A stretch of DNA of 54,488 bases, counting the filler, from Sluysia triapertura (lineage: Eukaryota): NCBI GenBank assembly GCA_046118255.1. It is 4 parts of 4 records of this genome, joined end to end, with 100 filler letters (N's around TTAATTAATTAA, not from the genome) between each part and the next. Parts side by side here need not be neighbours in the genome. Positions count along the whole stretch, not along the records: positions 40,932 to 54,488 come from JBJNIA010032711.1; 3 more parts are not named here. One strand, given 5' to 3'. Under the pieces are notes generated by a model. It was given only the letters and a program-made list of their open reading frames with translations, searched no databases and was not told the DNA's origin. Positions 40,932-54,488 of the stretch are shown here, one piece after another (position 1 is the stretch's first letter; each line of letters begins with the position of its first letter). A program made the position numbers and the translations under genes.

Positions 40932-41379
40932 TTCTAAAAATAAATATTTTAATTAAATATTAATTTACCTTTCTAAAAATAAATATTTTAATATTAATTT
41001 ACCTTTTTAAAAATAAATATTAAATTTCCTTTATTAATTTTCGATTTAAACAAATTAAATCAAATCTTTTTTAATTTAATATTTTTTACTTTTTTAATTT
41101 AATATATTTTTATTTTAATTTAATATTATTTAATTTTAATATATTTTTATTTTTTTATTTAATTTTTTTAATTTTAATATTTTTACTTTTTTAATATTAT
41201 TTAATATAATTACGATACGCAATTTTACTAATTTTAAAATATATACACAATTATACTTTAACACAATTATACTTTACACATAGAATATTTAGTTAAGAAT
41301 CAAAGTATTATTGACCCTCATATTACTTAGTAGCTTGATATAGTAAAGTTAAGAAGAGATTAATTTGCAATTCTTTAAT

Positions 41380-42124
41380 TATTTTTTTAAAGCAATCTTG
41401 TAAGTAGCCTCATATATTAGTCAAATAAGTAGTATATTACAAGTGATCCCAACATATAAGAAGAAAACTAATTTTGCTGTTAGGTTAGGCTTAATTATAG
41501 AAAAAACCCCAGCTAACATTACTGATAAAACTAATGAAAATATTGACAATCATGCAAAAATGATAATATTGATAACAAAACCATTGCAAAAATATTAATT
41601 AAATAATTAATTAAATAATAATTTAGATGAGTTTATATTGTAAAATATATAAGATCATGTTGATAATGTGAAAGTGTAACAATGAATGTTTTCAAGTCTA
41701 TTATTGATTGTGGAATGCTAATTTAGAGTTTTGAATTAATGGCCTATCTGGTTATTTATCTATAAAGTCTTCAGAATATTTCAAGAATAAATATTTATTT
41801 ACACATCATCATTTACATAATTGCTTAATTCTACATAAGAATTAGCAACCCTTTCTTCAAATTTTATGCTGATCTTTGAAATAATTAAAAATAAATTTAG
41901 ATATAATTAAATTTTATATTTATATTAAATTACGTAGAAAAAAATTCAGAATTTGAAATTGAGGGACAAATAATTATAATTATACAGACTACACCATACG
42001 CATATAGATATATTTTATTAAAGTTTATCAAATATTTTATATTTTGAATGATGTATTTTGAATAATATATTTTGCCTATTTTTCGACGTACAACATTACT
42101 CAAGTGTTTTTTTAAACAAAGCAT
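41380..42124 (-). pseudogene. Putative small multi-pass membrane protein locus with in-frame stops
   Basis: ATG at 42124. Exon to 41934 (hydrophobic YLYAYGVVCIIIIICP, AC|gtaat), 65-nt intron, exon from 41868 (TIKFEERVANSYVELSNY), then a codon-periodic hydrophobic frame FVINIIIFA*LSIFSLVLSVMLAGVFSIIKPNLTAKLVFFLYVGITCNILLI*LIYEATYK. Confidence 0.4.
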
Positions 42125-42674
42125 TTTATTTAATAAAATGTATGGTTATATACTTTTTTAAAGTCTTCAATTTTAAAATTAATTCTATATTGAAAAATTA
42201 TAATTATGGCTGCGTATTAAAATAATTTATGTTAAATAATTTATAAATAAAAGATATTATAAGAAAATTTAATGATATTTATAAAAATATCATATTGTAT
42301 TCAAATGTCATAGTTTTGTTTAAATAATCTCTAAATGTCTGTGCGTTTTTTGAAATATCAAAACATTAAATATTTTATATACGTGAAATAATAAAGTTTT
42401 AAATATTAAAATATTTTAATTATATCATATAATAAAACATGATAAATAACAGTTTTAAAAATAATTTACATAATTTTAAATTCAAATATATTTCTATGTC
42501 ATATTGATTATTTGGTTTTAGAATGAATAAAAGAATATAAAACTAATATAAATTTTTATATTTTGATTACATTTTAAGAAACATTTTTGTTACATTTTAT
42601 TTTTAGCTACTTTGAAGGTCATTAATATTATTTTGTTAAACCAATAATAATATTCAATAATTTTTTATTTTTAC

Positions 42675-43006
42675 ATGTTACAAAAAAGAAATACAAAGCA
42701 TAGATGTATAGTACCTTTAATTCAAAATCAAACTCGTATTAATGTTAAAGCAAAAAGTCTTCTTGAATTTATAAAAAATCGATCATTAGGATTAATTAGA
42801 TTAGTACCCTCTATAACAATCAGCCAGACAGAAAAGTATCTACCATTTTATTGGAAATGCAGAAATCTCAAAACTCAAAAGCATAATAAAGTATTTGCTA
42901 GTCAGTGGATTACTAACGACTCGATTGTTTATGGAACCAAATGTAACAGATTATTTTTATATAATATCGAAAATGATACTTCAGATGAAATACCACTTAT
43001 AAAAGG
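42675..43006 (+). CDS. DCAF12: DDB1- and CUL4-associated factor 12 (WD40), first coding exon
   Basis: [10 protein letters not shown]...[25 protein letters not shown]...IPLIK matches DCAF12 RSLVYYLKNR...[25 protein letters not shown]...IPILK. Donor GG|gtaatg. Confidence 0.93.
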
Positions 43007-43056
43007 GTAATGGTTAATTTTCAGTTTTCATATTTTTTACATTGTATAATATTTAG

Positions 43057-43225
43057 ATTATCGCGAGAAGATCAGTGCTCTTTTGCAGATGAACCATCAA
43101 CAAATTTTGGTATTCATGCAATTAAAAAGAATAAAAGCTGTACATTATTAGCAACAGGAGGTGACAATGTTAACAGTGTAGGAATATATCAGATACCTGA
43201 ATTCAGACCACAATATCTACTTGAG
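43057..43225 (+). CDS. DCAF12: DCAF12 second coding exon; gene continues beyond (next exon not found in the window)
   Basis: Follows a 50-nt intron (tttag|A). [35 protein letters not shown] matches [35 protein letters not shown]. Donor GAG|gttaat. Confidence 0.93.
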
Positions 43226-43819
43226 GTTAATATGTTTTTTTTATTGAAATTCATGTTTTGTTTTTTTTTGTAAAATTATGGAAATTTTTTGCTTTGATTT
43301 CATTTTATTAATTTACCTCATTTTTTGAATATAACGTGTACTTTATCCTTTAACTAATAAATTTATTGCATTATTATGATTTCATCAAATTAATCAAAAT
43401 TTTATTATATTTCCTTTTTGTGGTTATAATTTATAAACAATAAATTTATTTTATTGTTTTCGATAATAATTTAAATTACTTTCAGTTTATAATCACTTAA
43501 AATATTACAAATGGTTAACTTTAAAATTCGATGGGTAGCTCTTCGTAAATTATAATACTAAAATAAGTTCATAATTAATTCTGGTAGGGGAGATAAGTCA
43601 GTTGAGGCCAGAGAAGTGTCTAAAAGAGGCCACATAACTGTGATGTTTTTAAGCAATTAGAATGATTTTGACAATTTGAGATATGATATTTAATCAAATT
43701 ATGCAATATTCAATTTCCGAAAATCACTTTGTTTTCATATGATACAAATTGTGAAAGTAATTAGTCAACTTGTCAAACTAATGTTTTAATACGTGGAAAG
43801 TATATTATTTTCACAAGAT

Positions 43820-44126
43820 TGTTGTAAGGTCGCAAAAGAAAAACCCAGAATCCCGTATTCTCCAATCTGTATGTGTTTCTAAGGATTTTATTTGTTCTAG
43901 AATTCTTACATCTTTTCTCAAGGTGTACGTGTTACTAAGATTAGTAAGTGGATAGAGAAAGTGTTTGTGTATAAGTGATGTCTTTTTTTTCAGAGGGAAC
44001 TGTGTATGTGATAATAGTGGAATTTGTGTGATGTGATTGTAGGGTGAAGCGATTGTCTTAAGTGTCTAAGTAATAAGGGACTTCATCTATTGCTGTTACT
44101 AAAAATAGAATTGATGTGCTGCCACA
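43820..44126. mobile_element. Possible solo LTR
   Basis: TGTTGTAAG ... GCTGCCACA boundaries around a ~300-bp GT-rich, higher-GC block; no TSD match. Confidence 0.3.
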
Positions 44127-45519
44127 AATAGAATGCGAAAACTTTGTATGATGTATTTTAACTATAAATATCGCGAAATCCATCTTGATCCAGGTAATAC
44201 AGTTTTTTGTACTATAATTATTAACTCGCTGCCTATTGGATTTAATTTTGTCATACTGTTCAGATTTTACCTTAAAAAACCTAACAATTATAATTTTTTT
44301 ACTGCTATTGGGTTCGCCTATAATTTAAGCTTTATATCCATCGGAAGACTTAATTATAGGTAATTAGAAGTTTTTCTACGAAAAGTATTCCTTATTAAAA
44401 GTATTCTTTTAATTACGCTTACTAAGTTCAATATGAACCTCTAAAATGAATTTGACTGAGCTTATCCTTCAAAATAAAATAACAAACGAATGATACACGT
44501 GGTATCCTATGAACTTTTATTGTCAAAAATTGAAAATACAAAACTAAATTAACGTACAAAATTAGATCAATAATAATATACTAAACTATCGTACAAAATC
44601 AGATCAATAATAATAATAATAATTTTATCAAGTTTTAGGATTTTCTCCTAATCTTCAATATAATCGATTTTAAAAAGTGATTTTAACTCAGGTGTAATAC
44701 TTGAGTATAAAGTTTGTAAAAGTTTAAGTATTATTTTAACACAGCTATATTAGTGTGCAAAAAACTTAATATGAATAGCTTACTACTTGTTATAATAATT
44801 ATTAGAAGTTGATCCTCTCCAAATGAATCCAATGTCTTTCCTTTATTGACAATTGATAGTTAAATCGTTCTTTCCCAACAATTTAATTTATCCAATCCAG
44901 TACGAATATCTCCAATTCAAAAAAACGAATCCAACGTTTCTTCTTTTTTATTTAATCGGTAAACGAATCGTTTTCTTCCAATAAAGTTAATTTATTCAAT
45001 CGAATACAAATATCTCCAAATAAGAAGGGATTCAATGTACGACTGAGCGTTTTCACAAATTTAAGATTTTAAAATGTTTATAACTTGTGTATTCTGCTTA
45101 ATTTTTCGGCTATTTATATTAGTTTTTTTTATAAAAATATAATTATTTTAGTAAAATATCGATAATATTAAAAAATCAAATTATTTTATAATCAAATTTT
45201 TAGTAATTACAAAAATATTGTTATTTTATCTGATTAATCAAAGTCTAATTAATTTTTATCTAAAAATGTCTACTTAATTTTTATCTAAAAATTTTATTCG
45301 TAAATTTTGTACTAATTAATAATTAATTTCTTATCTAAAAAATTTCGTTATTATTTTGTTTAATTTAATTTAATTATTTTAATTATTTAATTTAATTATT
45401 TTGTTTGTTACATTTTAAACTATTCTTTGATTTTTTAATATTTACATTTTCATTTATAATATTTATAATATTTACAATACTCTTATGTTTTGACATAATA
45501 TAGATTCATGTTTGATGGT

Positions 45520-45951
45520 AACATGTTTGTCTTCGGTTTTTCTCTCATTTTCTCTTTGATGTCTCCGCGATATAACTTTCATTTTCAAAAATATCAAACC
45601 AATGCATTGTACACTTGAAATCAGTTTGATGACGTTCATCGAAAGTCACAACGCTTGCTGTGCTTGCTTGATAAAAATGCTAGCAACGGAGTTAAGCTAC
45701 TAGCATTTACCACTAGACTAGCATTTTCTCTTTCAATAAAAATTGAATAAAAATATTTACATGCAATAAAAATAAATATTTCTTTGCCTTCGTGTTTTGG
45801 AAACTTTCTTTTTTGTCCATCCAACCATGAACAGTTGATTGAGAATTATGGTGTTGTCTTTATTCTTTACACTCTTCATCAGCCTCAGCTACTGCAAAAA
45901 TGTAAGTTTATTTTCCTTTAATTCATCTTTTGTGTTGTATGAGGTTGCCAT
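45520..45951 (-). mobile_element. Decayed pogo/Tigger (CENP-B-like HTH) transposase N-terminus
   Basis: MATSYNTKDELRKI.., SQSTVHGWMDKKE, ..ERENASLVVNAS.. and DFKCTMHWFDIF (cf. the FKASxGWLxxF motif) across frameshifts. Confidence 0.5.
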
Positions 45952-46349
45952 TAATTGAAGTAGTTTTCCTAAGAGACAATAATAATTGAATCCGAAAGAG
46001 GAATAAATGAAAGCAGGATTGTAGCTGTTGTTGGAATTGGAGTCAGGGTAGCTCACTGCGACGAAGTTTTGGGTACCGCGAAAGTATGTGATTAACGTAG
46101 ATACGATATGACATCTTCACCATATCCATAGAGATATCTACCAACAGTTTGTTAATAGCACATTTACTAAATTTGAAGCTTTTAAAATAGTTACATTTTC
46201 GGGGTTCATTGTGCCAAATTTGGGAAATATTAGGATGAAAATTTTAACTTTACAACGAACAAATTTACTTAGATGTTGAGAAAAAGATGAATATTTTAAA
46301 AAATTTCTTTTACGAATATTAGAATAAGAATCAAATTTGTCAAATGGGG

Positions 46350-49300
46350 TTTTAACATCAATTAAGTAGTAGCGGTCTATTTGTGAGGTGAGATTGTGCA
46401 AGTGATGAGGCGAGCAGGAATTGACACTTCAAGGATTTCCAGCGATAGAAATGAGATAACACAGCCTGGGTAAGGTTATCCTTTTCATCCTTTGTGAAAG
46501 AATATGAAGTATCTTGAAGGGAAAGATTGATAGAAAAGGAATCTTCAGCAAAGGCAAACAAAACTTGAATGTTATGTTTAGATTTCAATGCTTTATAACA
46601 TTAGACCAAAGCGTAGATTTAGAAGGATACATTTCAGAGTCAGTAATACCAAAGAGCCAGTTGACAAGTCAGCAGTGATATAGAAGAAGTCAATAGAGGT
46701 AAAGCGAAAATGCATTTCAAGGGCTGGTCGAAGAAGGTTTCTAAAACTCCTGTCAAAGGAGGAAGTATCATTTTCAATATTTGAATCATTAGAGTGCATT
46801 TTTGCCTTTCCAAGCTGGGTTCTTATAATTTTACATGCTGTAAAACGATAAGGAAATCGTGAAAGTATAAAGATGTTTATTTCTCTAATTTTCTCTACTG
46901 GATGAAGGCGAGAGTTTAAAATCTTTGAACAATCAGAGAGAGCAGTTTAAAGCAGAGATTCTATTGATAGATGTTTAGCACTACTAATTTTTGAGCCAAG
47001 ATAGGTGTAGTGTTTGTAGAATCAATAATAGGAACTTGAATGTTATAAATACTCAAAGGTGGTTCTAAATTTTTCTTAATAGTATTCAGATAACCACATT
47101 TATCAGGGCGAAATTTCAGAATGATGTAAGAAGAAATAATAGAAAGTTCATTTAAAGTGTGAGAATTTTAGAATAAAGAATAATTTTAACGTGAGTCCAC
47201 AAACGTACTAGGCTTACCAGTTGGATTTATAGATAAAAGATATTAAATTAAAAAATTGTCTAAAGTGTAATTTTGTATTAGGGTACTCTTTACTTCATGA
47301 CTTGACCGTTGATTCTAATATAATTCTGGAGGTATTTTAATTAATGTTGTCTAAAGAGTATATATTCTTGGCTTAGTGTTAATTTTTAAATTTAAACTGC
47401 CTAAAATATACGTGATTCTGCTATTCTTAACTTAACAATTATTCATTCTCGATTCTAGTAGGTTCAGGAAGTGTATAAATTATCTTTAGTGTTAAGGTTT
47501 CTAAATGATTAAAGAAATTATTTAATTAAATAATTTATGCAGTATTTTACGAAGATCCTATGAAAGGATCTATAAAAATGAGTTTACGGTATTATATTTA
47601 AATTCTAATCGTTGAAATCTTTACTTTCCCGAAGATTTTATAGTTAAGACTATTTAATACTGAAAACTAAATTCTTAAAAATTTTATTACATAATTATTA
47701 GTTTATACACTGATATATATAACAAGAAATTAGTTTTCAATTCCTAAACTAATGAAATTTTACTAATGATTTTACTCCAGATCTATTATAAGATCTCTAT
47801 AGAAATAATAATTGATTTTAGTGGATTTTACGTAGATACTGTAATAGTATCGGACCTCAAAAAATAAACTAACGTTACAAGATTTTAAATTAAAGTGTTG
47901 AAAAAACAATCAAAATCGATTTGAAGTAATGTTCAAAGTTCTGCCACTGTAGTAAGAATCGACATTGACGAATTCCGAATTTGTTAAAAAATTTGGTGTG
48001 CGATTTATATGAAAATTCGTAGCTATTTATATTTGATTTAGATCGAATTTCCAGAATTTTTAAATTTAAATATTAAATTTAAACAAAATTTTAAATATTT
48101 AAATACAAATAAAACAGATATTAAAAATATTAAATTTAAATATTAATATTAAATTAAATTAAATAAAGCAGATATTAAAAATATTAAATATTACCTATAT
48201 TTGTATTATTTCCAGAATTAACAATTTCCAAAAATTAATAATAATTCATATAATTATTTTCAAAGTAAAACAAAAATCGATAATAATAATTATTATATGA
48301 ATTATAAGCTGTTTATAAATGTTTATGTACAGTATGCATGTTATAAAAATGAATAAACCATTCAATATGCATAAAGTAATTAATAAACACAATGTCTTAT
48401 CATAATCACAATGTCATATTTACAAAAGTATGTTGTAGTGATTGATGAGAATCAGATATAATCATTATGTCATAAACATAAGCAAGGCAGGTAAAGGAAT
48501 ATCCTAAATAACGAAACGAATAACAAATCGAAGTAAAGGTTCAATAGCAAGGCAGAAAAGAGTCAAAGAGCCTTGCTTAACACCAACTTTAACTGGAACA
48601 AGAGTTGATTTGTGACGCCCAAGAGTGTAAGTACAATAATTATCACTATATAGGTTCTTCAGTAATGAAAGTGTTGGTTTTCGTAAGCCAGAATTTTCAA
48701 GCAGTCAAAATAAATAGTCGTGTGGCACAGAGCCAAAAGCCTTTGAATAATCAAGCCAACAAACAAACAATGAAGATTTTGGCAAGTGAGTTGTGCTGGC
48801 GTGTAAAAGGGTTTGTAGTGTATGAATGTGTTCTAAGCAAGCATCAGGATGAATTAATGCTTTCTGAATTGGATTAATCAGAGATCCAGCTTTCATCCAG
48901 CCAATTAATCTCGAGTTAAGGATTTTCGTGTAAAGGTATCTACGATTGCAATGGGTCGCCATGAAGATGAGGAAGTAGAATCATCATCATTTCCAGGCTT
49001 AAGTACAAGGTGGGTGGGAAAAGTTTTCCATTGTTGCGGAACATCAGCTGTACGATGGATATGGTTGAATAAACAGAGTAGAAATGAAAACTGAGGATAT
49101 GTTAATTGCCAGTCAAGGAAAGAAACACTAGATTGACCTGGGGAGGAGGATTTGTCGCAGGTTGCATAAGTGGTTTTAATTTCTTTTACATCAATAGGTA
49201 AATCTCCGAGGAAGCCTTCAAAGGGGTTTAACTTTAATAAATCTGAGGGAGTAAATTTTGGATATTCTGAAGCACAAAAGTGTGAAATGATGGAATTCAT

Positions 49301-50160
49301 AGAAGGATACATAAACCTACCACTTCCTCACTAAAAAGTTTTTGAATCACGATTGAAGGTTCCTCATCATAGTTTTTGCGAAGAAGGAAACTTGAGAAGG
49401 AAGGATCAGCCGGTTTTGCATGAAATTTCTTTCCTTTTCTATGGTGTTGATTTTCTTCTGGATGGAGGTTTTGTTTTAAGTTTAGAAGGCACAGCATGAT
49501 GGGCAGTTTCCAAGGAAGCTGTAGAATCAATAGCACCAGAGAAATGAAAAGAAATGGCATGGAGTAGAATTGGATGAACTTGAGAAACCATTTTCGTATT
49601 CTTTTTATTCAAGAATTTCATCAATAGATGAAAGTAATGGTTTCTTAGTATCAGTAAGATTAAGAGGTTGACCACAACAGTCAATGCCAAATCTAGCATA
49701 ATAATAGGAAAAATGTAATATCCACAGAGAACATTATCAGAAGGTTGAACGAGGGCATTAAGAAGGTTACACTGAACAATCGGAAGGGAAATATCATCAT
49801 TATCATTAAGGAAGGAAAATTTATTAACGATAGAATTCAAAACAGTATGCAGTTGAGTAAGATTTTACTTATTATCGGAACCAAGAGGATCATAAAGATA
49901 AGAATAATTGGTAACACAATCTGCTATAAAGAGAAGCCAATGATTTTGTTCCCAAAGTATTGGCCAGAATATGATTCTCCATTGGAACATTAGAGAAAAA
50001 GGAAAAGAATTAAGAAATCCGTGCAGATCATCAGCTAGAAGAAATAGATTGTATCAGAGAAGATCTCGTTGCTCCAAGGAAAAATTGGTTGTATACTAAT
50101 TATGAGAATCCTTCCAAAGTCTCGAAGAGATATATGTTGATTCTTTTAAAAAATTTCCAA
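46350..50160 (-). mobile_element. Decayed non-LTR retrotransposon, R2/R4/NeSL-like reverse transcriptase, split by an insertion
   Basis: RT motifs in order: SSPG, VPQQWK..LVLKPG, SWRPIA, YTKILNSRL, QK..ACLEH, WLDYSKAFGSVPH, GVKQG, LAYVYDI (decayed YADD), then after the insertion KFRPDKC and YTYLG. Element ends are uncertain. Confidence 0.88.
47158..48424. mobile_element. 1267-bp TG...CA insertion (probable solo LTR) with AAAG target-site duplication, inside the RT
   Basis: AAAG|TGTGAGAAT ... ATATTTACA|AAAG. Removing it plus one AAAG restores the minus-strand RT frame SDSHQSLQHTLNELS. Confidence 0.85.
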
Positions 50161-50492
50161 ATAGATTTAACGTTGCTTGTGACCTGATTTTAAATAGTTA
50201 ACTTCTTTTTATATATCTTTCGCAGCAGTAACTGATTATATTATAATATTTTATAATATTATGAAACTATTTTATATTTTTCAGTAACTAGTTTATTATT
50301 AAATAGCAATAATTTTCTCGGATTTTATTATGTTAGAACAATAATTTCTAGATTATTTTTCAGAACTTTTAAAAATTAAAAACTACAATAAAACTGTTTA
50401 CAATATTTATAATTAATAATAATATGATTTTCATATATTAAAAGTTAATTTAAATTTATTTATATTTAAATTTATTGTTAGACTTCAATAAA

Positions 50493-50573
50493 TGGACTGA
50501 CTGGGATTCGAATTCGGGCCACCTTACATCTGAGGTGTGCAGTTCGATGCCCTGACCACTAAGTTATTAGCCT
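50493..50573 (-). ncRNA. Degenerate tRNA-derived sequence (left TIR copy)
   Basis: AGGCTAATAACTTAGTGGTCAGGGCA...GAATTCGAATCCCAGTCAGTCCA: decayed A and B boxes, homologous to 51891-51962. Confidence 0.65.
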
Positions 50574-51890
50574 CGTCCAACAATTTTATTTTATTATAGT
50601 CAATTATACTATCATTATTCTAAATGGTACTTTACGTTTTTACCTCAAAAATACGAAGAAATATAGTGATATTTTAAAGTGAGTTGTGTTTAGTGAAATG
50701 TGAACGTATAATGTAAATTTAATCAATCGAATTAATCATTTAAAAATTGGAAAATTAAGAAGACTTATCAACCTAATCTAATTTTGTTTGACTAATGAGT
50801 GTCGGTTTCATGGAAATAAAGTTTATGCAGATTGTGTGTTATTTGTTAATTATAAAGTTAAATGTGATTAAAATATACTATACAAGCTAACTAATCATGA
50901 ACTAAGAATTATATTTCGCTAACGTCATTAAACAGAAAACCGTGCATTAGAATATAATTATATTACTGGAATATAACGGTTTGTTATTACTTCATTTTAC
51001 ATTGATTATTTTGATTTAATTTTTTGGACAATACAGTTTTTAGTTATTAGTGCTCCATAAAGTTTATTATTTGATTTGTAATTTAATATTTCTTGGTAAA
51101 AAAGTTGCTGTTTCCAATAATGCAAAAAAGTATTGTGTCTCATATTTACTAGAAACGATACTAAGCTGATCATTTTTAACAATAACGCTAATTTAAAGAC
51201 GTCATTATGTTAAGTGATTTTGATTTAATTGTGTAAACAATGTGATTCAATTTTGTATTCGACATTTCGACATTGTGTCAAATCATAAATTTATTATAAA
51301 CAAAATTATATTAATTTGTCAAATTGATTGTGCTAGTTTAATCAAAGAGTTTATTATTTTAAAATGCACTAATAATAAAAATCAATTTAAATTCGATATT
51401 AATTTATTGTAAACATGTACATCAATTTTCAATCAAAAGAACCAATTATATTTAAGTTAATAACTTAATCAAAATTTAATTGATTCATAAATTCTTATTT
51501 TAATATTCGAAGCATCACTACATTCGAAACATTTTCAATACAAATGAATTTATTGAGACTGAAACTCGAAGTCACTTTCTAGTTAATCTATATTAAACTA
51601 ACAATTTGCTAACGGTATAATGCTTACTCTAAGAATGTGACTTTAGCTAAGGCTACTTAGTCGTATTTCATGAATTACACAATTAAGCATTTTTGATAAC
51701 TGATTTGTGTACTTCAAAAAATTCAAGATTTTAAAACACTATAAGAAATCTATTTCGTATATGAATGGAATTTATTTAATACTTAAATAAATTATATTAT
51801 TACTATTTAAATATTATTAGTGTTGGGGTAAAAGGCCTAAAAAGTGCTAAGTAGTATAAATGAATATATTGAAAATGAAATTGTTAGACT

Positions 51891-51962
51891 GGGCTGATAG
51901 CTCAGTGGTAGAGCATTCGCACTGCGCTTCGAAGGTCCCGGGTTCGATCCACGGTCAGTCCA
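51891..51962 (+). tRNA. tRNA-Ala(TGC)-like sequence, probably a pseudo-tRNA or tRNA-derived element (right TIR copy)
   Basis: Acceptor stem GGGCTGA/TCAGTCC, D arm GCTC-AGTGGTA-GAGC, T arm CCGGG-TTCGATC-CACGG, followed by TTTT. The anticodon arm is irregular (18 nt, 4-bp stem). Confidence 0.7.
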
Positions 51963-52183
51963 TTTTACGAAGTCTAACATTATTATAATTATAATAATAA
52001 TTATTATTATTTTACATCATTGCTATTATATCATAATTATCACCTGGCAAGGTAGAATTGCCGACTTAGATTTATTTCAAGATTGTCCGGCAAGTGTAAC
52101 AAATAATATTGTTTCATAAATATGTAAACTTTGTATAGTTTTAATTTAATTACCATTTTGTGAATAATATTTATCCTTGTGCT

Positions 52184-52720
52184 TGTGGTGGCTCACAATT
52201 TATTCCTGAAAAAACTAAATATTAATAGTATTAAATATTAAATTATTTTAAAACATTTAATACAAAACATTGCTCGGTTCTCACAACTTTTATTTCTTAG
52301 CCTCCATACCTTTAATACACTCAGGATCACATCATTATTCTTTATGAATTCCTATTCAACCAGACTAATCGGAACAATGATTAAACAATACAAATTCATT
52401 TTTTCATTCAACGAAATCGGAACTCATACAAAAATAAACATTTAACTTTATAGACTCAAAACAGCCTAAATTATAATATTCTTTTACATAAACAATGTTA
52501 CTTTTAGCGCTAATAAATTACTAGACATTTCAGATTCACTTTAACTTTATAATGTAAAAGCTTGATACACCATAATTATTTCAACTTCGTACTTCACATT
52601 TCCAACCATTCACTGAAAATGTTTGTATTAAGCCATATTATACAAAGGATCATTCTTTATCTCAGACACACCACATTTAATACATTTGTGCGAATTTTTG
52701 CTTTCACTTTATAAATATTA
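52184..52720 (+). mobile_element. Isolated left arm of the TGTRGTGGCT foldback family
   Basis: Starts TGTGGTGGCTCAC and continues as a CA-rich tract like those at 17508 and 27950; no matching right arm seen. Confidence 0.45.
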
Positions 52721-53370
52721 ATGAGTCCTCTATGATGTTGGGCTTATACAGTTAAGGGCCAATTCATAGATGTCAACGTAAAAATATGCGTGTTTTATGG
52801 AGGTCAAAATAAGATGTAAAGTTTGCAATGATTTAGATCCGCTACATAGCGAGGTTATTTTCTAAGATTTTATATTAGATCTAAAATGATCTGTTTTTAA
52901 GTCAATATAAAAAAATTAGAATTAATAATAACTCGAGTACTTCAAAGGTATTTTGTAGCTATATAATTTAACTTCATACGTATGAAAATAAATGCAGATG
53001 TATTCTTATTGTCAGTTTTTATCCCAAGGTTATTTAAAAAATTGTACGTTCTTATGGTGTCTTCGAATAGGTTGTGAAATACTTGTTTAGAAATTCGATA
53101 GTAAATATTTTAAAATATTTTTGTTTCAGATAATATTAATACTTAAAAATTCTAATTTACAAAGTATAAAATGTAACACTAATGTATTAATAATAGTCAA
53201 ATTTAATAACATAAAATTGTTAGCCAAATAATTTAAATTCAAATAATATAAATTGATAATCAAATAATCCACAGTTGATTATTATAAAATTCAAAAATTC
53301 AATAATGAAAGACTGATATAATAAAATTTATACTTAAGTAATTCAAACTAATGCCAGTTGTAATTATTTT

Positions 53371-53386
53371 TAATAATAATAATAAC

Positions 53387-53431
<45 letters not shown>
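53371..53431. repeat. (TAA)n microsatellite
   Basis: About 20 TAA units with one CAA interruption. Confidence 0.95.
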
Positions 53432-54488
53432 TTCTTGTAGTTTATTTTATAAATTGAACTTATTTGTGTAATCCTATAATTTACAATAAAAATTATTAGA
53501 TAATTTACTTTTAATTTTAAATTCTTTATTAAAATGAAAAATTTCTCTAAGTTCCAATATTTGAAGATAATAAAATGTTCGGTAAACGAGATTCAACGAA
53601 TATGCTGAAAATTACATGTATCTGACGTCAATAATTATTAATAAAGATTTTCAAATATTACTAATATCAAGTAAAAACTTTTAAAATTCTTTTTTTAAAT
53701 TGTATCATCGTATGTTGTATTAATGTTTTTTACTCAATTTATATTTGCTTATTTACACTTTGATATACAAAATGATCAAAACTAGATGATTATTAAAATT
53801 TAATACAGTAATAATAATATCAATAATATAAAATTGTTAATTATAAAATTAATATAAAAATAAAATTGTTAATTATAATAATAATAACTACAATAATAAT
53901 AGCTATTTTTATTTTCTTTAATTTATTTATACAAAATTATATTTACAATTCTTACATTTATTACATTTTTTATTCATTTATATTATTTATTCCTTATTAT
54001 ATAATCTATCATTAAACATCTTCTTACTTTATGCTATACAATATTATTATCAATAGCCGCAGCATTCTTAATAATACAAACTATATTACATTCATACATT
54101 TAAGTTTATGGTACATTTGATTTCAAACATTTAAGTTATAAATAAAGAAAATTATATTTATTCGTATTCAGATTTCGTTATTTTATTTAAACCTAAAATT
54201 TTCTTTTATATTAGTCTTAAATTTTTTTAATTATGTTAAGTAGTATTAATGACAGACAGTAATAATAATAATAATAATATAACGGTTGCGTCTTTAAAAC
54301 TTGTTAAATATTACAACTCAATATTATTATCTTGATCAACTTAAACCTTAATAATTTCAATAGTGAGTATATCAAGTATAATTTTACCGTAATCTTCTTT
54401 TATAATATTAATAACTTCTTGAAAATCAAATCAAAACTAAGACAATGATGTACTATTAAACAAAAATAACTTAATATAATTTATTATC

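What the first reader, a model, noticed from the sequence alone, without database searches (positions are those of the whole stretch)
50476..51979. Transposon-like element whose terminal inverted repeats each contain an outward-facing tRNA-like gene
Seen: two tRNA-like sequences 1.3 kb apart in back-to-back orientation. Their similarity extends at least 60 bp upstream of the tRNA 5' ends, whereas a SINE normally starts at the tRNA head. The outer ends read TGTTAGACTTC...GAAGTCTAACA and are flanked by TTAT on both sides. Each tRNA is also bracketed by its own short inverted repeat (TGTT(A/G)GAC...GTCTAACA). Known: TGT..ACA ends with 4-bp TSDs typify integrase-type elements (Ginger DNA transposons, LTR elements), and A/B boxes recruit TFIIIC/Pol III. 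Inference: a DNA-transposon family that has built Pol III promoters into its TIRs, possibly acting as chromatin insulators, small-RNA sources or a route for dispersing pseudo-tRNAs. I do not recall this architecture as a described class.
Basis: partly seen in the sequence, partly recalled or inferred. Interest (0 to 1): 0.8.

Follow-up and report, generated by a model that had tools for sequence, protein, structure and literature searches.

The report
Transposon-like element with tRNA-like inverted ends
A 1.5-kb non-coding stretch in an AT-rich, flatworm-like animal genome is bounded by two inverted ~130-bp repeats that each carry a decayed tRNA-like module; it looks like one copy of a small integrase-type DNA transposon, but a single locus cannot show that such a family exists.

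Summary
Two homologous units lie in inverted orientation at 50476-50611 (-) and 51852-51979 (+). Each is a tRNA-like body bracketed by TGTTRGAC/GTCTAACA. Their 3' ends face outward and TTAT flanks both outer ends. Two corrections:
- Only the right unit scores as a tRNA (Rfam 45 bits); the left is recognisable only through homology to the right.
- Inward similarity is significant for about 30 nt, not 60.

The outer edges are sharp, and neither unit has its own target-site duplication. The shared sequence includes 38 nt upstream of the tRNA start. It also includes 13 nt beyond a T4 stop. Both argue for copying as DNA, not SINE retroposition.

The anatomy fits a non-autonomous Ginger2-like element: TGTTA...TAACA ends, ~130-bp inverted repeats, a 4-bp duplication, an AT-rich target and no coding capacity. 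I give this about 55%.

The closest published analogue is Helenus, a miniature LTR retrotransposon with tRNA-like LTRs and 4-bp duplications in animals. Here the repeats are inverted and no primer-binding site is present.

No other copy could be found: the host genome is in none of the collections I could search, so whether this is a family is untested. The TTAT match is weak evidence (1% generic, about 6% given pure A/T flanks). It is at most a new variant of a known kind, of moderate interest.

The parts
50445..50475 (.). Left outer flank: pure A/T run with (AATTTA)n-like simple repeat; its last 4 nt (50472-50475, TTAT) are the putative left target-site duplication
50476..50611 (-). Left arm (136 nt): outer terminus TGTTAGACTTC, degenerate tRNA-like body, inner TGTTGGAC motif (50575-50582) and a 29-nt leader (50583-50611)
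   Evidence: alignments; anchored test; no tRNA match; A-box-like 50556-50566 and B-box-like 50504-50514 read, each with mismatches to consensus
50612..51851 (.). Core of 1240 bp, 22-26% GC. It has no ORF over 58 aa, no Pfam match, and no similarity to the arms or to the rest of the piece
51852..51881 (+). Right-arm leader (30 nt) shared with the left arm; contains TATAAAT at 51855-51861 (-36 to -30 from the tRNA start) and the purine-rich GAAAATGAAA next to TGTT
51882..51979 (+). Right-arm module (98 nt): TGTTAGACT, tRNA-like body 51891-51962, T4 at 51963-51966, AGTCTAACA. A box 51898-51908, B box 51941-51951. One extra C sits in the anticodon stem
   Evidence: 45.3 bits; the 9-bp end repeat closes a stem
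51980..52014 (.). Right outer flank: (ATT)11 microsatellite in a pure A/T run; its first 4 nt (51980-51983, TTAT) are the putative right target-site duplication

Best explanation
Positions 50476-51979 are one old copy of a non-autonomous cut-and-paste DNA transposon of the integrase type, Ginger2-like.

Shown: it has ~130-bp terminal inverted repeats that start with TGTTA, a non-coding 1.24-kb core, and a 4-bp duplication (TTAT) of an A/T-rich target.

Inferred: it would be moved in trans by an integrase-like DDE transposase encoded elsewhere in the genome. That enzyme would bind the TGTTAGAC end motif and make 4-bp staggered cuts.

Shown: each inverted repeat is built round a tRNA-Cys-like pseudo-gene that faces outward. 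In the right arm this is a complete Pol III-style unit, with a TATA-like box at -33, A and B boxes, and a T4 stop 13 nt before the element's end. A short tRNA-like RNA could therefore be made from it. The left arm's copy is decayed.

Inferred: the module most likely records how the ends arose. One route is from a tRNA-derived SINE. Another is from a Helenus-type LTR whose TG...CA ends an integrase-like enzyme already recognised. It need not be a function the element depends on.
For: - The arms are homologous over 128-136 nt (E 6e-16). The outer edge is sharp: outward anchored score 11 against 33 inward.
- The terminal 11 nt are perfectly inverted.
- TGTTRGAC is found only at the four unit edges.
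- Identical TTAT abuts both ends.
- Neither unit has its own duplication (scores 10 and 14 against a null of 13 +/- 3.4).
- The shared sequence includes 38 nt upstream of the tRNA start and 13 nt past a T4 run. A Pol III transcript would not carry either, so copying was at the DNA level.
- The core has no coding capacity.
- Bao et al. 2010 give Ginger2 these traits: TGTNR termini, 50-180-bp TIRs, 4-bp duplications, AT-rich targets, and a 252-bp non-autonomous family.
Against: - This is a single locus. No second copy exists in the 13.5-kb piece or in any collection I could search.
- The TTAT match is weak, because both flanks are A/T-only simple repeats.
- The target does not fit the Ginger2 consensus RTATAY.
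- No transposase was seen.
- Simple-repeat flanks directly after both 3' ends are also what retroposon tails look like.
- The arms are 16% diverged and the left arm has lost its tRNA features.
- Ginger2 was not reported from flatworms in the paper I read.
Confidence: 0.55

Rival explanations
1. Two independent insertions of a short tRNA-derived mobile unit that happen to lie 1.2 kb apart in opposite orientation. The unit could be a SINE-like retroposon with an A/T simple-repeat tail, a 98-107-bp mini-MITE with 8-9-bp end repeats, or LTR fragments of a Helenus-type TRIM. On this reading the TTAT match is chance.
For: - Each 98-107-nt module has its own TGTTRGAC/GTCTAACA end repeats, like a small LTR or MITE.
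- Both 3' ends run straight into A/T simple repeats, (ATT)11 on the right. Retroposon tails look like this.
- The right unit looks better preserved than the left, as if younger.
- The TTAT match has about a 6% chance in A/T-only flanks.
- Helenus LTRs with tRNA-like bodies and TG...CA ends are known in animals.
Against: - Both copies share 29-30 nt beyond the inner TGTT motif. This is outside a mini-MITE or solo LTR and upstream of any Pol III start.
- There is a T4 run 13 nt before the shared 3' end.
- Neither unit has a duplication of its own.
- No directly repeated partner LTR and no primer-binding site lie within the piece.
- Polarising by tRNA features gives only about 7 derived changes in the left unit against 2 in the right (my count). 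This does not clearly show unequal age.
Confidence: 0.22
2. A local inverted duplication of a tRNA-Cys pseudogene with its flanks, or two paralogous tRNA-like genes whose promoter and terminator flanks stayed similar. No mobile element is involved.
For: - The shared stretch coincides with what a Pol III gene needs: a TATA-like box at -33, A and B boxes, and a T4 stop.
- Divergence is even along the unit, at 84% in both body and flanks, as expected for neutral decay after one duplication.
Against: - The similarity ends exactly at the outer partner of a 9-bp inverted repeat in both copies, and 13 nt beyond the terminator. A random duplication breakpoint would not do this twice.
- Both outer flanks are pure A/T runs (about 1.7% of positions each, derived from the run list).
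- The left copy is not a working tRNA gene, so selection on its flanks is unlikely.
Confidence: 0.1
3. A rearranged Helenus-type miniature LTR retrotransposon (TRIMp3) with inverted LTRs, integrated by a Gypsy-like integrase. On this reading the shared 30 nt are the polypurine-tract side of the internal region.
For: - There is a tRNA-like body inside ~100-bp repeats with TGTTA...TAACA ends and a 4-bp duplication, as in animal Helenus.
- Purine-rich GAAAATGAAA / AAAATAAAA lies directly upstream of TGTT in both arms.
Against: - The repeats are inverted, not direct.
- Nothing resembling a primer-binding site follows either repeat.
- The T4 run would stop a Pol III transcript inside the repeat.
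- The 1504-bp length exceeds the reported 311-1263 bp.
- No known reverse-transcription route gives inverted LTRs, and the purine-rich stretch is unremarkable in a 75% A+T genome.
Confidence: 0.08

Closest known systems
Ginger2/Tdd DNA transposons and their non-autonomous derivatives (Bao, Kapitonov and Jurka 2010, PMC2836005)
   Same: TGTNR termini (here TGTTA); TIR length within 50-180 bp (here about 130); 4-bp target-site duplication; A/T-rich target; short non-coding derivatives are known (Ginger2-1N1_NV, 252 bp).
   Different: The target TTTATT does not fit RTATAY. No integrase-like transposase was seen. No tRNA-like content is mentioned for Ginger2 TIRs in that paper. The hosts listed there do not include flatworms.
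Helenus (TRIMp3), a miniature LTR retrotransposon with tRNA-like LTRs (Kojima 2024, PMC10886601)
   Same: Terminal repeats of about 100-300 bp contain a tRNA-derived, probably non-functional body with A and B boxes. Ends are TG...CA. Animal members make 4-bp duplications. The element is non-coding.
   Different: Helenus has direct LTRs with a primer-binding site and a polypurine tract between them. Here the repeats are inverted, no primer-binding site exists, a T4 stop sits inside the repeat, and the element is longer than any reported Helenus.
Cassandra and Ajax (TRIMs with 5S rRNA-like LTRs)
   Same: A Pol III gene-like module is repeated in both terminal repeats of a small non-autonomous element.
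   Different: The module is 5S-derived rather than tRNA-derived. The LTRs are direct. The hosts are plants and nemerteans.
tRNA-derived SINEs (SINE2)
   Same: tRNA-like body with A and B boxes; A/T simple repeats directly after the 3' end.
   Different: The shared sequence starts 38 nt upstream of the tRNA head. There is a T4 run before the shared 3' end. There is no body or LINE-derived tail region. No duplication surrounds a single unit.

Membership tests
Ginger2/Tdd-type non-autonomous DNA transposon | Termini 5'-TGTNR...YNACA-3' | tested here: met
   TGTTAGACTTC at 50476 and GAAGTCTAACA ending at 51979; criterion
Ginger2/Tdd-type non-autonomous DNA transposon | Terminal inverted repeats of about 50-180 bp | tested here: met
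   Arms of 136 and 128 nt, E 6e-16, 84% identity at aligned sites; inner limit set
Ginger2/Tdd-type non-autonomous DNA transposon | 4-bp target-site duplication | tested here: met
   TTAT on both sides; chance 0.9-1.1% generic, about 6% in A/T-only flanks, so the support is weak
Ginger2/Tdd-type non-autonomous DNA transposon | Preferred target RTATAY | tested here: not met
   The inferred target is T-TTAT-T inside an A/T run. It is A/T-rich but not the consensus. This is a preference, not a strict rule
Ginger2/Tdd-type non-autonomous DNA transposon | An autonomous relative with the same ends that encodes an H2C2 + DDE integrase-like transposase | not testable with these tools
   There is no integrase in the 13.5-kb piece, and the host genome is not in any searchable collection
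Ginger2/Tdd-type non-autonomous DNA transposon | Several copies at different sites, each with its own duplication | not testable with these tools
   No other copy in the piece or in the metagenome, genome or viral collections
Helenus (TRIMp3) | tRNA-like sequence with A and B boxes inside the terminal repeats | tested here: met
   Right arm scores 45.3 bits with intact boxes. The left arm is homologous but degenerate
Helenus (TRIMp3) | Two LTRs in direct orientation | tested here: not met
   The units are on opposite strands, and no direct partner lies within the piece
Helenus (TRIMp3) | Primer-binding site next to the 5' LTR and polypurine tract next to the 3' LTR | tested here: not met
   No TGG-type site complementary to a tRNA 3' end follows either repeat. 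Only a weak purine-rich GAAAATGAAA lies upstream of TGTT
tRNA-derived SINE | The element starts at or just before the tRNA head, and Pol III can read through to the tail | tested here: not met
   Shared sequence begins 38-39 nt upstream of the tRNA start. T4 at 51963-51966 lies 13 nt before the shared end
tRNA-derived SINE | Target-site duplication around each single copy | tested here: not met
   Scores 10 (right) and 14 (left) against a null of 13.0 +/- 3.4
MITE made of one 98-107-bp module | Similarity confined between the end repeats, and a duplication around the module | tested here: not met
   Similarity runs 29-30 nt beyond the inner repeat. Flanks are AAAT/TTAT for the right module and TTAT/ATTT for the left

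The most novel reading that the evidence does not exclude
[quoted passage not shown] In this family the terminal inverted repeats are complete outward-facing Pol III units: an upstream TATA-like box, A and B boxes, and a T4 stop. It would be the DNA-transposon counterpart of the TRIMp3 retrotransposons (Cassandra, Helenus, Ajax). It would show that integrase-type elements of both classes have repeatedly taken small-RNA genes into their ends.
Probability: 0.3. Interest if true: 0.6.

Novelty: new variant of a known kind. Interest (0 to 1): 0.4.

Why it matters
If a genome census confirms a family, it would extend the idea of a Pol III module in terminal repeats. That idea is so far known only for miniature LTR retrotransposons. 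It would then also apply to DNA transposons with integrase-like ends. It would also add a source of dispersed pseudo-tRNA calls in flatworm-type genomes that annotators should mask. It could supply material for asking whether TFIIIC and Pol III sites carried by transposons shape chromatin. As it stands, this is one decayed copy and a lead, not a demonstration.

Tried and rejected
- **Other copies.** Exact-pattern scans with the conserved 3' end and 5' end found nothing. A distant blastn of the right arm against phage records also found nothing.
- **Copies inside the piece.** nhmmer and blastn found only the two units.
- **Host genome.** Exact-ORF look-ups for two ORFs of the piece were not on record. 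The word-index protein search with a DCAF12 exon found nothing in its length range. I ran no further search on the spurious ORFs that cross the unit, because the host is evidently absent from that collection.
- **Hammerhead or other RNA families.** Only the tRNA hit appeared at E up to 1.
- **Heterogeneous conservation.** My first impression was that the flanks are better kept than the tRNA body. At aligned sites both are 84%, and the difference lies in indels only.
- **Extension of the arms to about 70 nt** via TTGRGGTAAAA is not significant.
- **RNA folding.** The end repeats close a stem, but z-scores are only -1.3 to -2.0.
- **Other superfamilies.** Helitron, hAT, Mutator, Tc1/mariner, piggyBac and PIF were rejected from general knowledge, because their ends and duplication lengths do not fit the flanks read.
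- **Coding remnants in the core.** None were found.

Full report
**What is there**

The piece (40932-54488) is about 25% G+C. It carries two exons of a DCAF12-like WD40 gene on the + strand at 42675-43273. Pfam Beta-prop_DCAF12 matches them at E 1.6e-9 and 1.9e-10.

The best relatives of the first exon are DCAF12 of Schistosoma japonicum (40% identity) and Paragonimus (42%). An acoel, a hydrozoan and cestodes follow. The second exon is 61% identical to the S. japonicum protein over 38 residues, in colinear order. The host is therefore an animal, most likely a flatworm that is not itself in the protein collections.

A decayed non-LTR reverse-transcriptase remnant lies at about 48.5-49.9 kb on the - strand.

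**The two units**

The right unit (+ strand) runs as follows:
- a 30-nt leader at 51852-51881
- TGTTAGACT at 51882-51890
- a tRNA-like body at 51891-51962
- ATTTTACGA
- AGTCTAACA, ending at 51979

ARAGORN calls the body a tRNA with an irregular anticodon loop. Rfam's tRNA model gives 45.3 bits against a threshold of 29. Read directly:
- the A box TAGCTCAGTGG is at 51898-51908
- the B box GGTTCGATCCA is at 51941-51951
- a T4 run is at 51963-51966
- TATAAAT is at 51855-51861, which is -36 to -30 from the tRNA start

An extra C in the anticodon stem makes it a pseudo-tRNA. By my reading it is closest to tRNA-Cys. The left copy keeps the CTGCA of a GCA anticodon loop. This rests on my memory of tRNA-Cys, not on a tool.

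The left unit (- strand, 50476-50611) is homologous. blastn gives 138 nt with E 6e-16. Identity is 84% at aligned sites, with 14 gap columns, 13 of them in the tRNA body. It has mismatches in the acceptor stem, the A box and the B box, and a 9-nt insertion. It gets no tRNA match even in a 221-nt search.

**Edges**

An anchored extension test gave these results:
- Similarity continues 29-30 nt inward of TGTT. The score is 33, and none of 400 random anchored pairs reached it (mean 2.2, max 28).
- It does not continue significantly further inward (p = 0.30).
- Outward of ...ACA it stops at once (score 11).

The 8-mer TGTTRGAC occurs four times in the piece, exactly at the four module edges (0.32 expected). 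In both units it closes a stem round the cloverleaf in the predicted fold. The folding z-scores are modest.

**Flanks**

TTAT abuts both outer ends. Identical 4-mers at this spacing occur at 0.9% of positions in the piece.

Both flanks are pure A/T runs. On the left, 50445-50476 holds an (AATTTA)n-like repeat. On the right, 51979-52014 holds (ATT)11. Within such runs a 4-mer match has roughly a 6% chance by my estimate. No other duplication length fits.

Neither unit taken alone has a duplication. The scores are 10 and 14 against a null of 13.0 +/- 3.4.

The 1240-bp core has no ORF above 58 aa, no Pfam hit, and no similarity to the arms or the rest of the piece.

**How the units were copied**

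The shared sequence begins 38-39 nt upstream of the tRNA start. It includes a TATA-like box at the position where upstream Pol III promoter elements sit in several organisms (general knowledge). It also continues 13 nt past a T4 run.

A Pol III transcript from the internal promoter would contain neither stretch. The two units were therefore copied as DNA, not by SINE-type retroposition.

**Best reading (about 55%)**

One non-autonomous integrase-type DNA transposon occupies 50476-51979, with ~130-bp TIRs and a 4-bp duplication. Bao et al. 2010 describe Ginger2 elements with the following features:
- TGTNR termini
- 50-180-bp TIRs
- 4-bp duplications
- a preference for A/T-rich targets (RTATAY)
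- a 252-bp non-autonomous family

The locus meets the first three. It sits in an A/T-rich target but does not fit the RTATAY consensus. The transposase and the existence of other copies could not be tested.

The steps 'mobilised in trans' and 'Pol III transcription from the right arm' are inferences.

**Rivals**

- Two independent insertions of a short tRNA-derived unit (about 22%). This explains the tail-like flanks and each module's own end repeats. It does not explain the shared leader or the missing single-unit duplications.
- A local inverted duplication or a pair of paralogous tRNA-like genes (about 10%). This does not explain why similarity ends exactly at the outer partner of the end repeat in both copies, or why both flanks are A/T runs.
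- A rearranged Helenus-type element with inverted LTRs (about 8%). This shares the tRNA-like repeat, the TG...CA ends and the 4-bp duplication. It fails on repeat orientation and on the primer-binding site.

**Comparison with what is known**

The principle is in fact published for LTR elements:
- Cassandra has 5S-like LTRs.
- Helenus has tRNA-like LTRs and, in animals, 4-bp duplications. It is reported from six animal phyla, not including flatworms.
- Ajax has 5S-like LTRs.

Together these are called TRIMp3 (Kojima 2024, PMC10886601). That paper does not mention DNA transposons or inverted repeats. My other literature searches found no DNA transposon with tRNA-like TIRs. This is an absence in a limited library, not proof of novelty.

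I therefore rate the locus as at most a new variant of a known kind.

**Limits**

Every attempt to find more copies failed, because the host genome is in none of the reachable collections. The family-level claims, the pairing frequency and the transposase all remain open. The decisive test is the genome census listed under next steps.

Noticed in passing
window 42675-43273 (+): Two exons of a DCAF12-like WD40 gene separated by a short intron. The best relatives are trematode DCAF12 at 40-61% identity, pointing to a flatworm-like host that is absent from the protein collections.
   Followed up: partly
window about 48500-49900 (-): Decayed non-LTR (LINE-like) reverse-transcriptase remnant broken by frameshifts and stops, with a weak RVT_1 match (E 0.026). 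It ends about 500 bp from the left arm of the element.
   Followed up: partly
window 51979-52011: (ATT)11 microsatellite starting at the last base of the right arm. An (AATTTA)n-like repeat at 50436-50474 ends one base before the left arm. Both outer flanks being simple repeats is unlikely by chance and is not fully explained.
   Followed up: partly
window 45900-47400: A stretch of higher G+C (28-35%) with several short ORFs on the - strand and a faint calponin-homology hit (E 0.075). It may hold exons of a second gene.
   Followed up: no
window 50476-50611 versus 51852-51979: Of 20 substitutions between the arms, 8 are G in the right arm against A in the left, on the tRNA-sense strand. Only 2 are the matching C against T, which hints at a strand-biased G-to-A decay of the left copy.
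   Followed up: no
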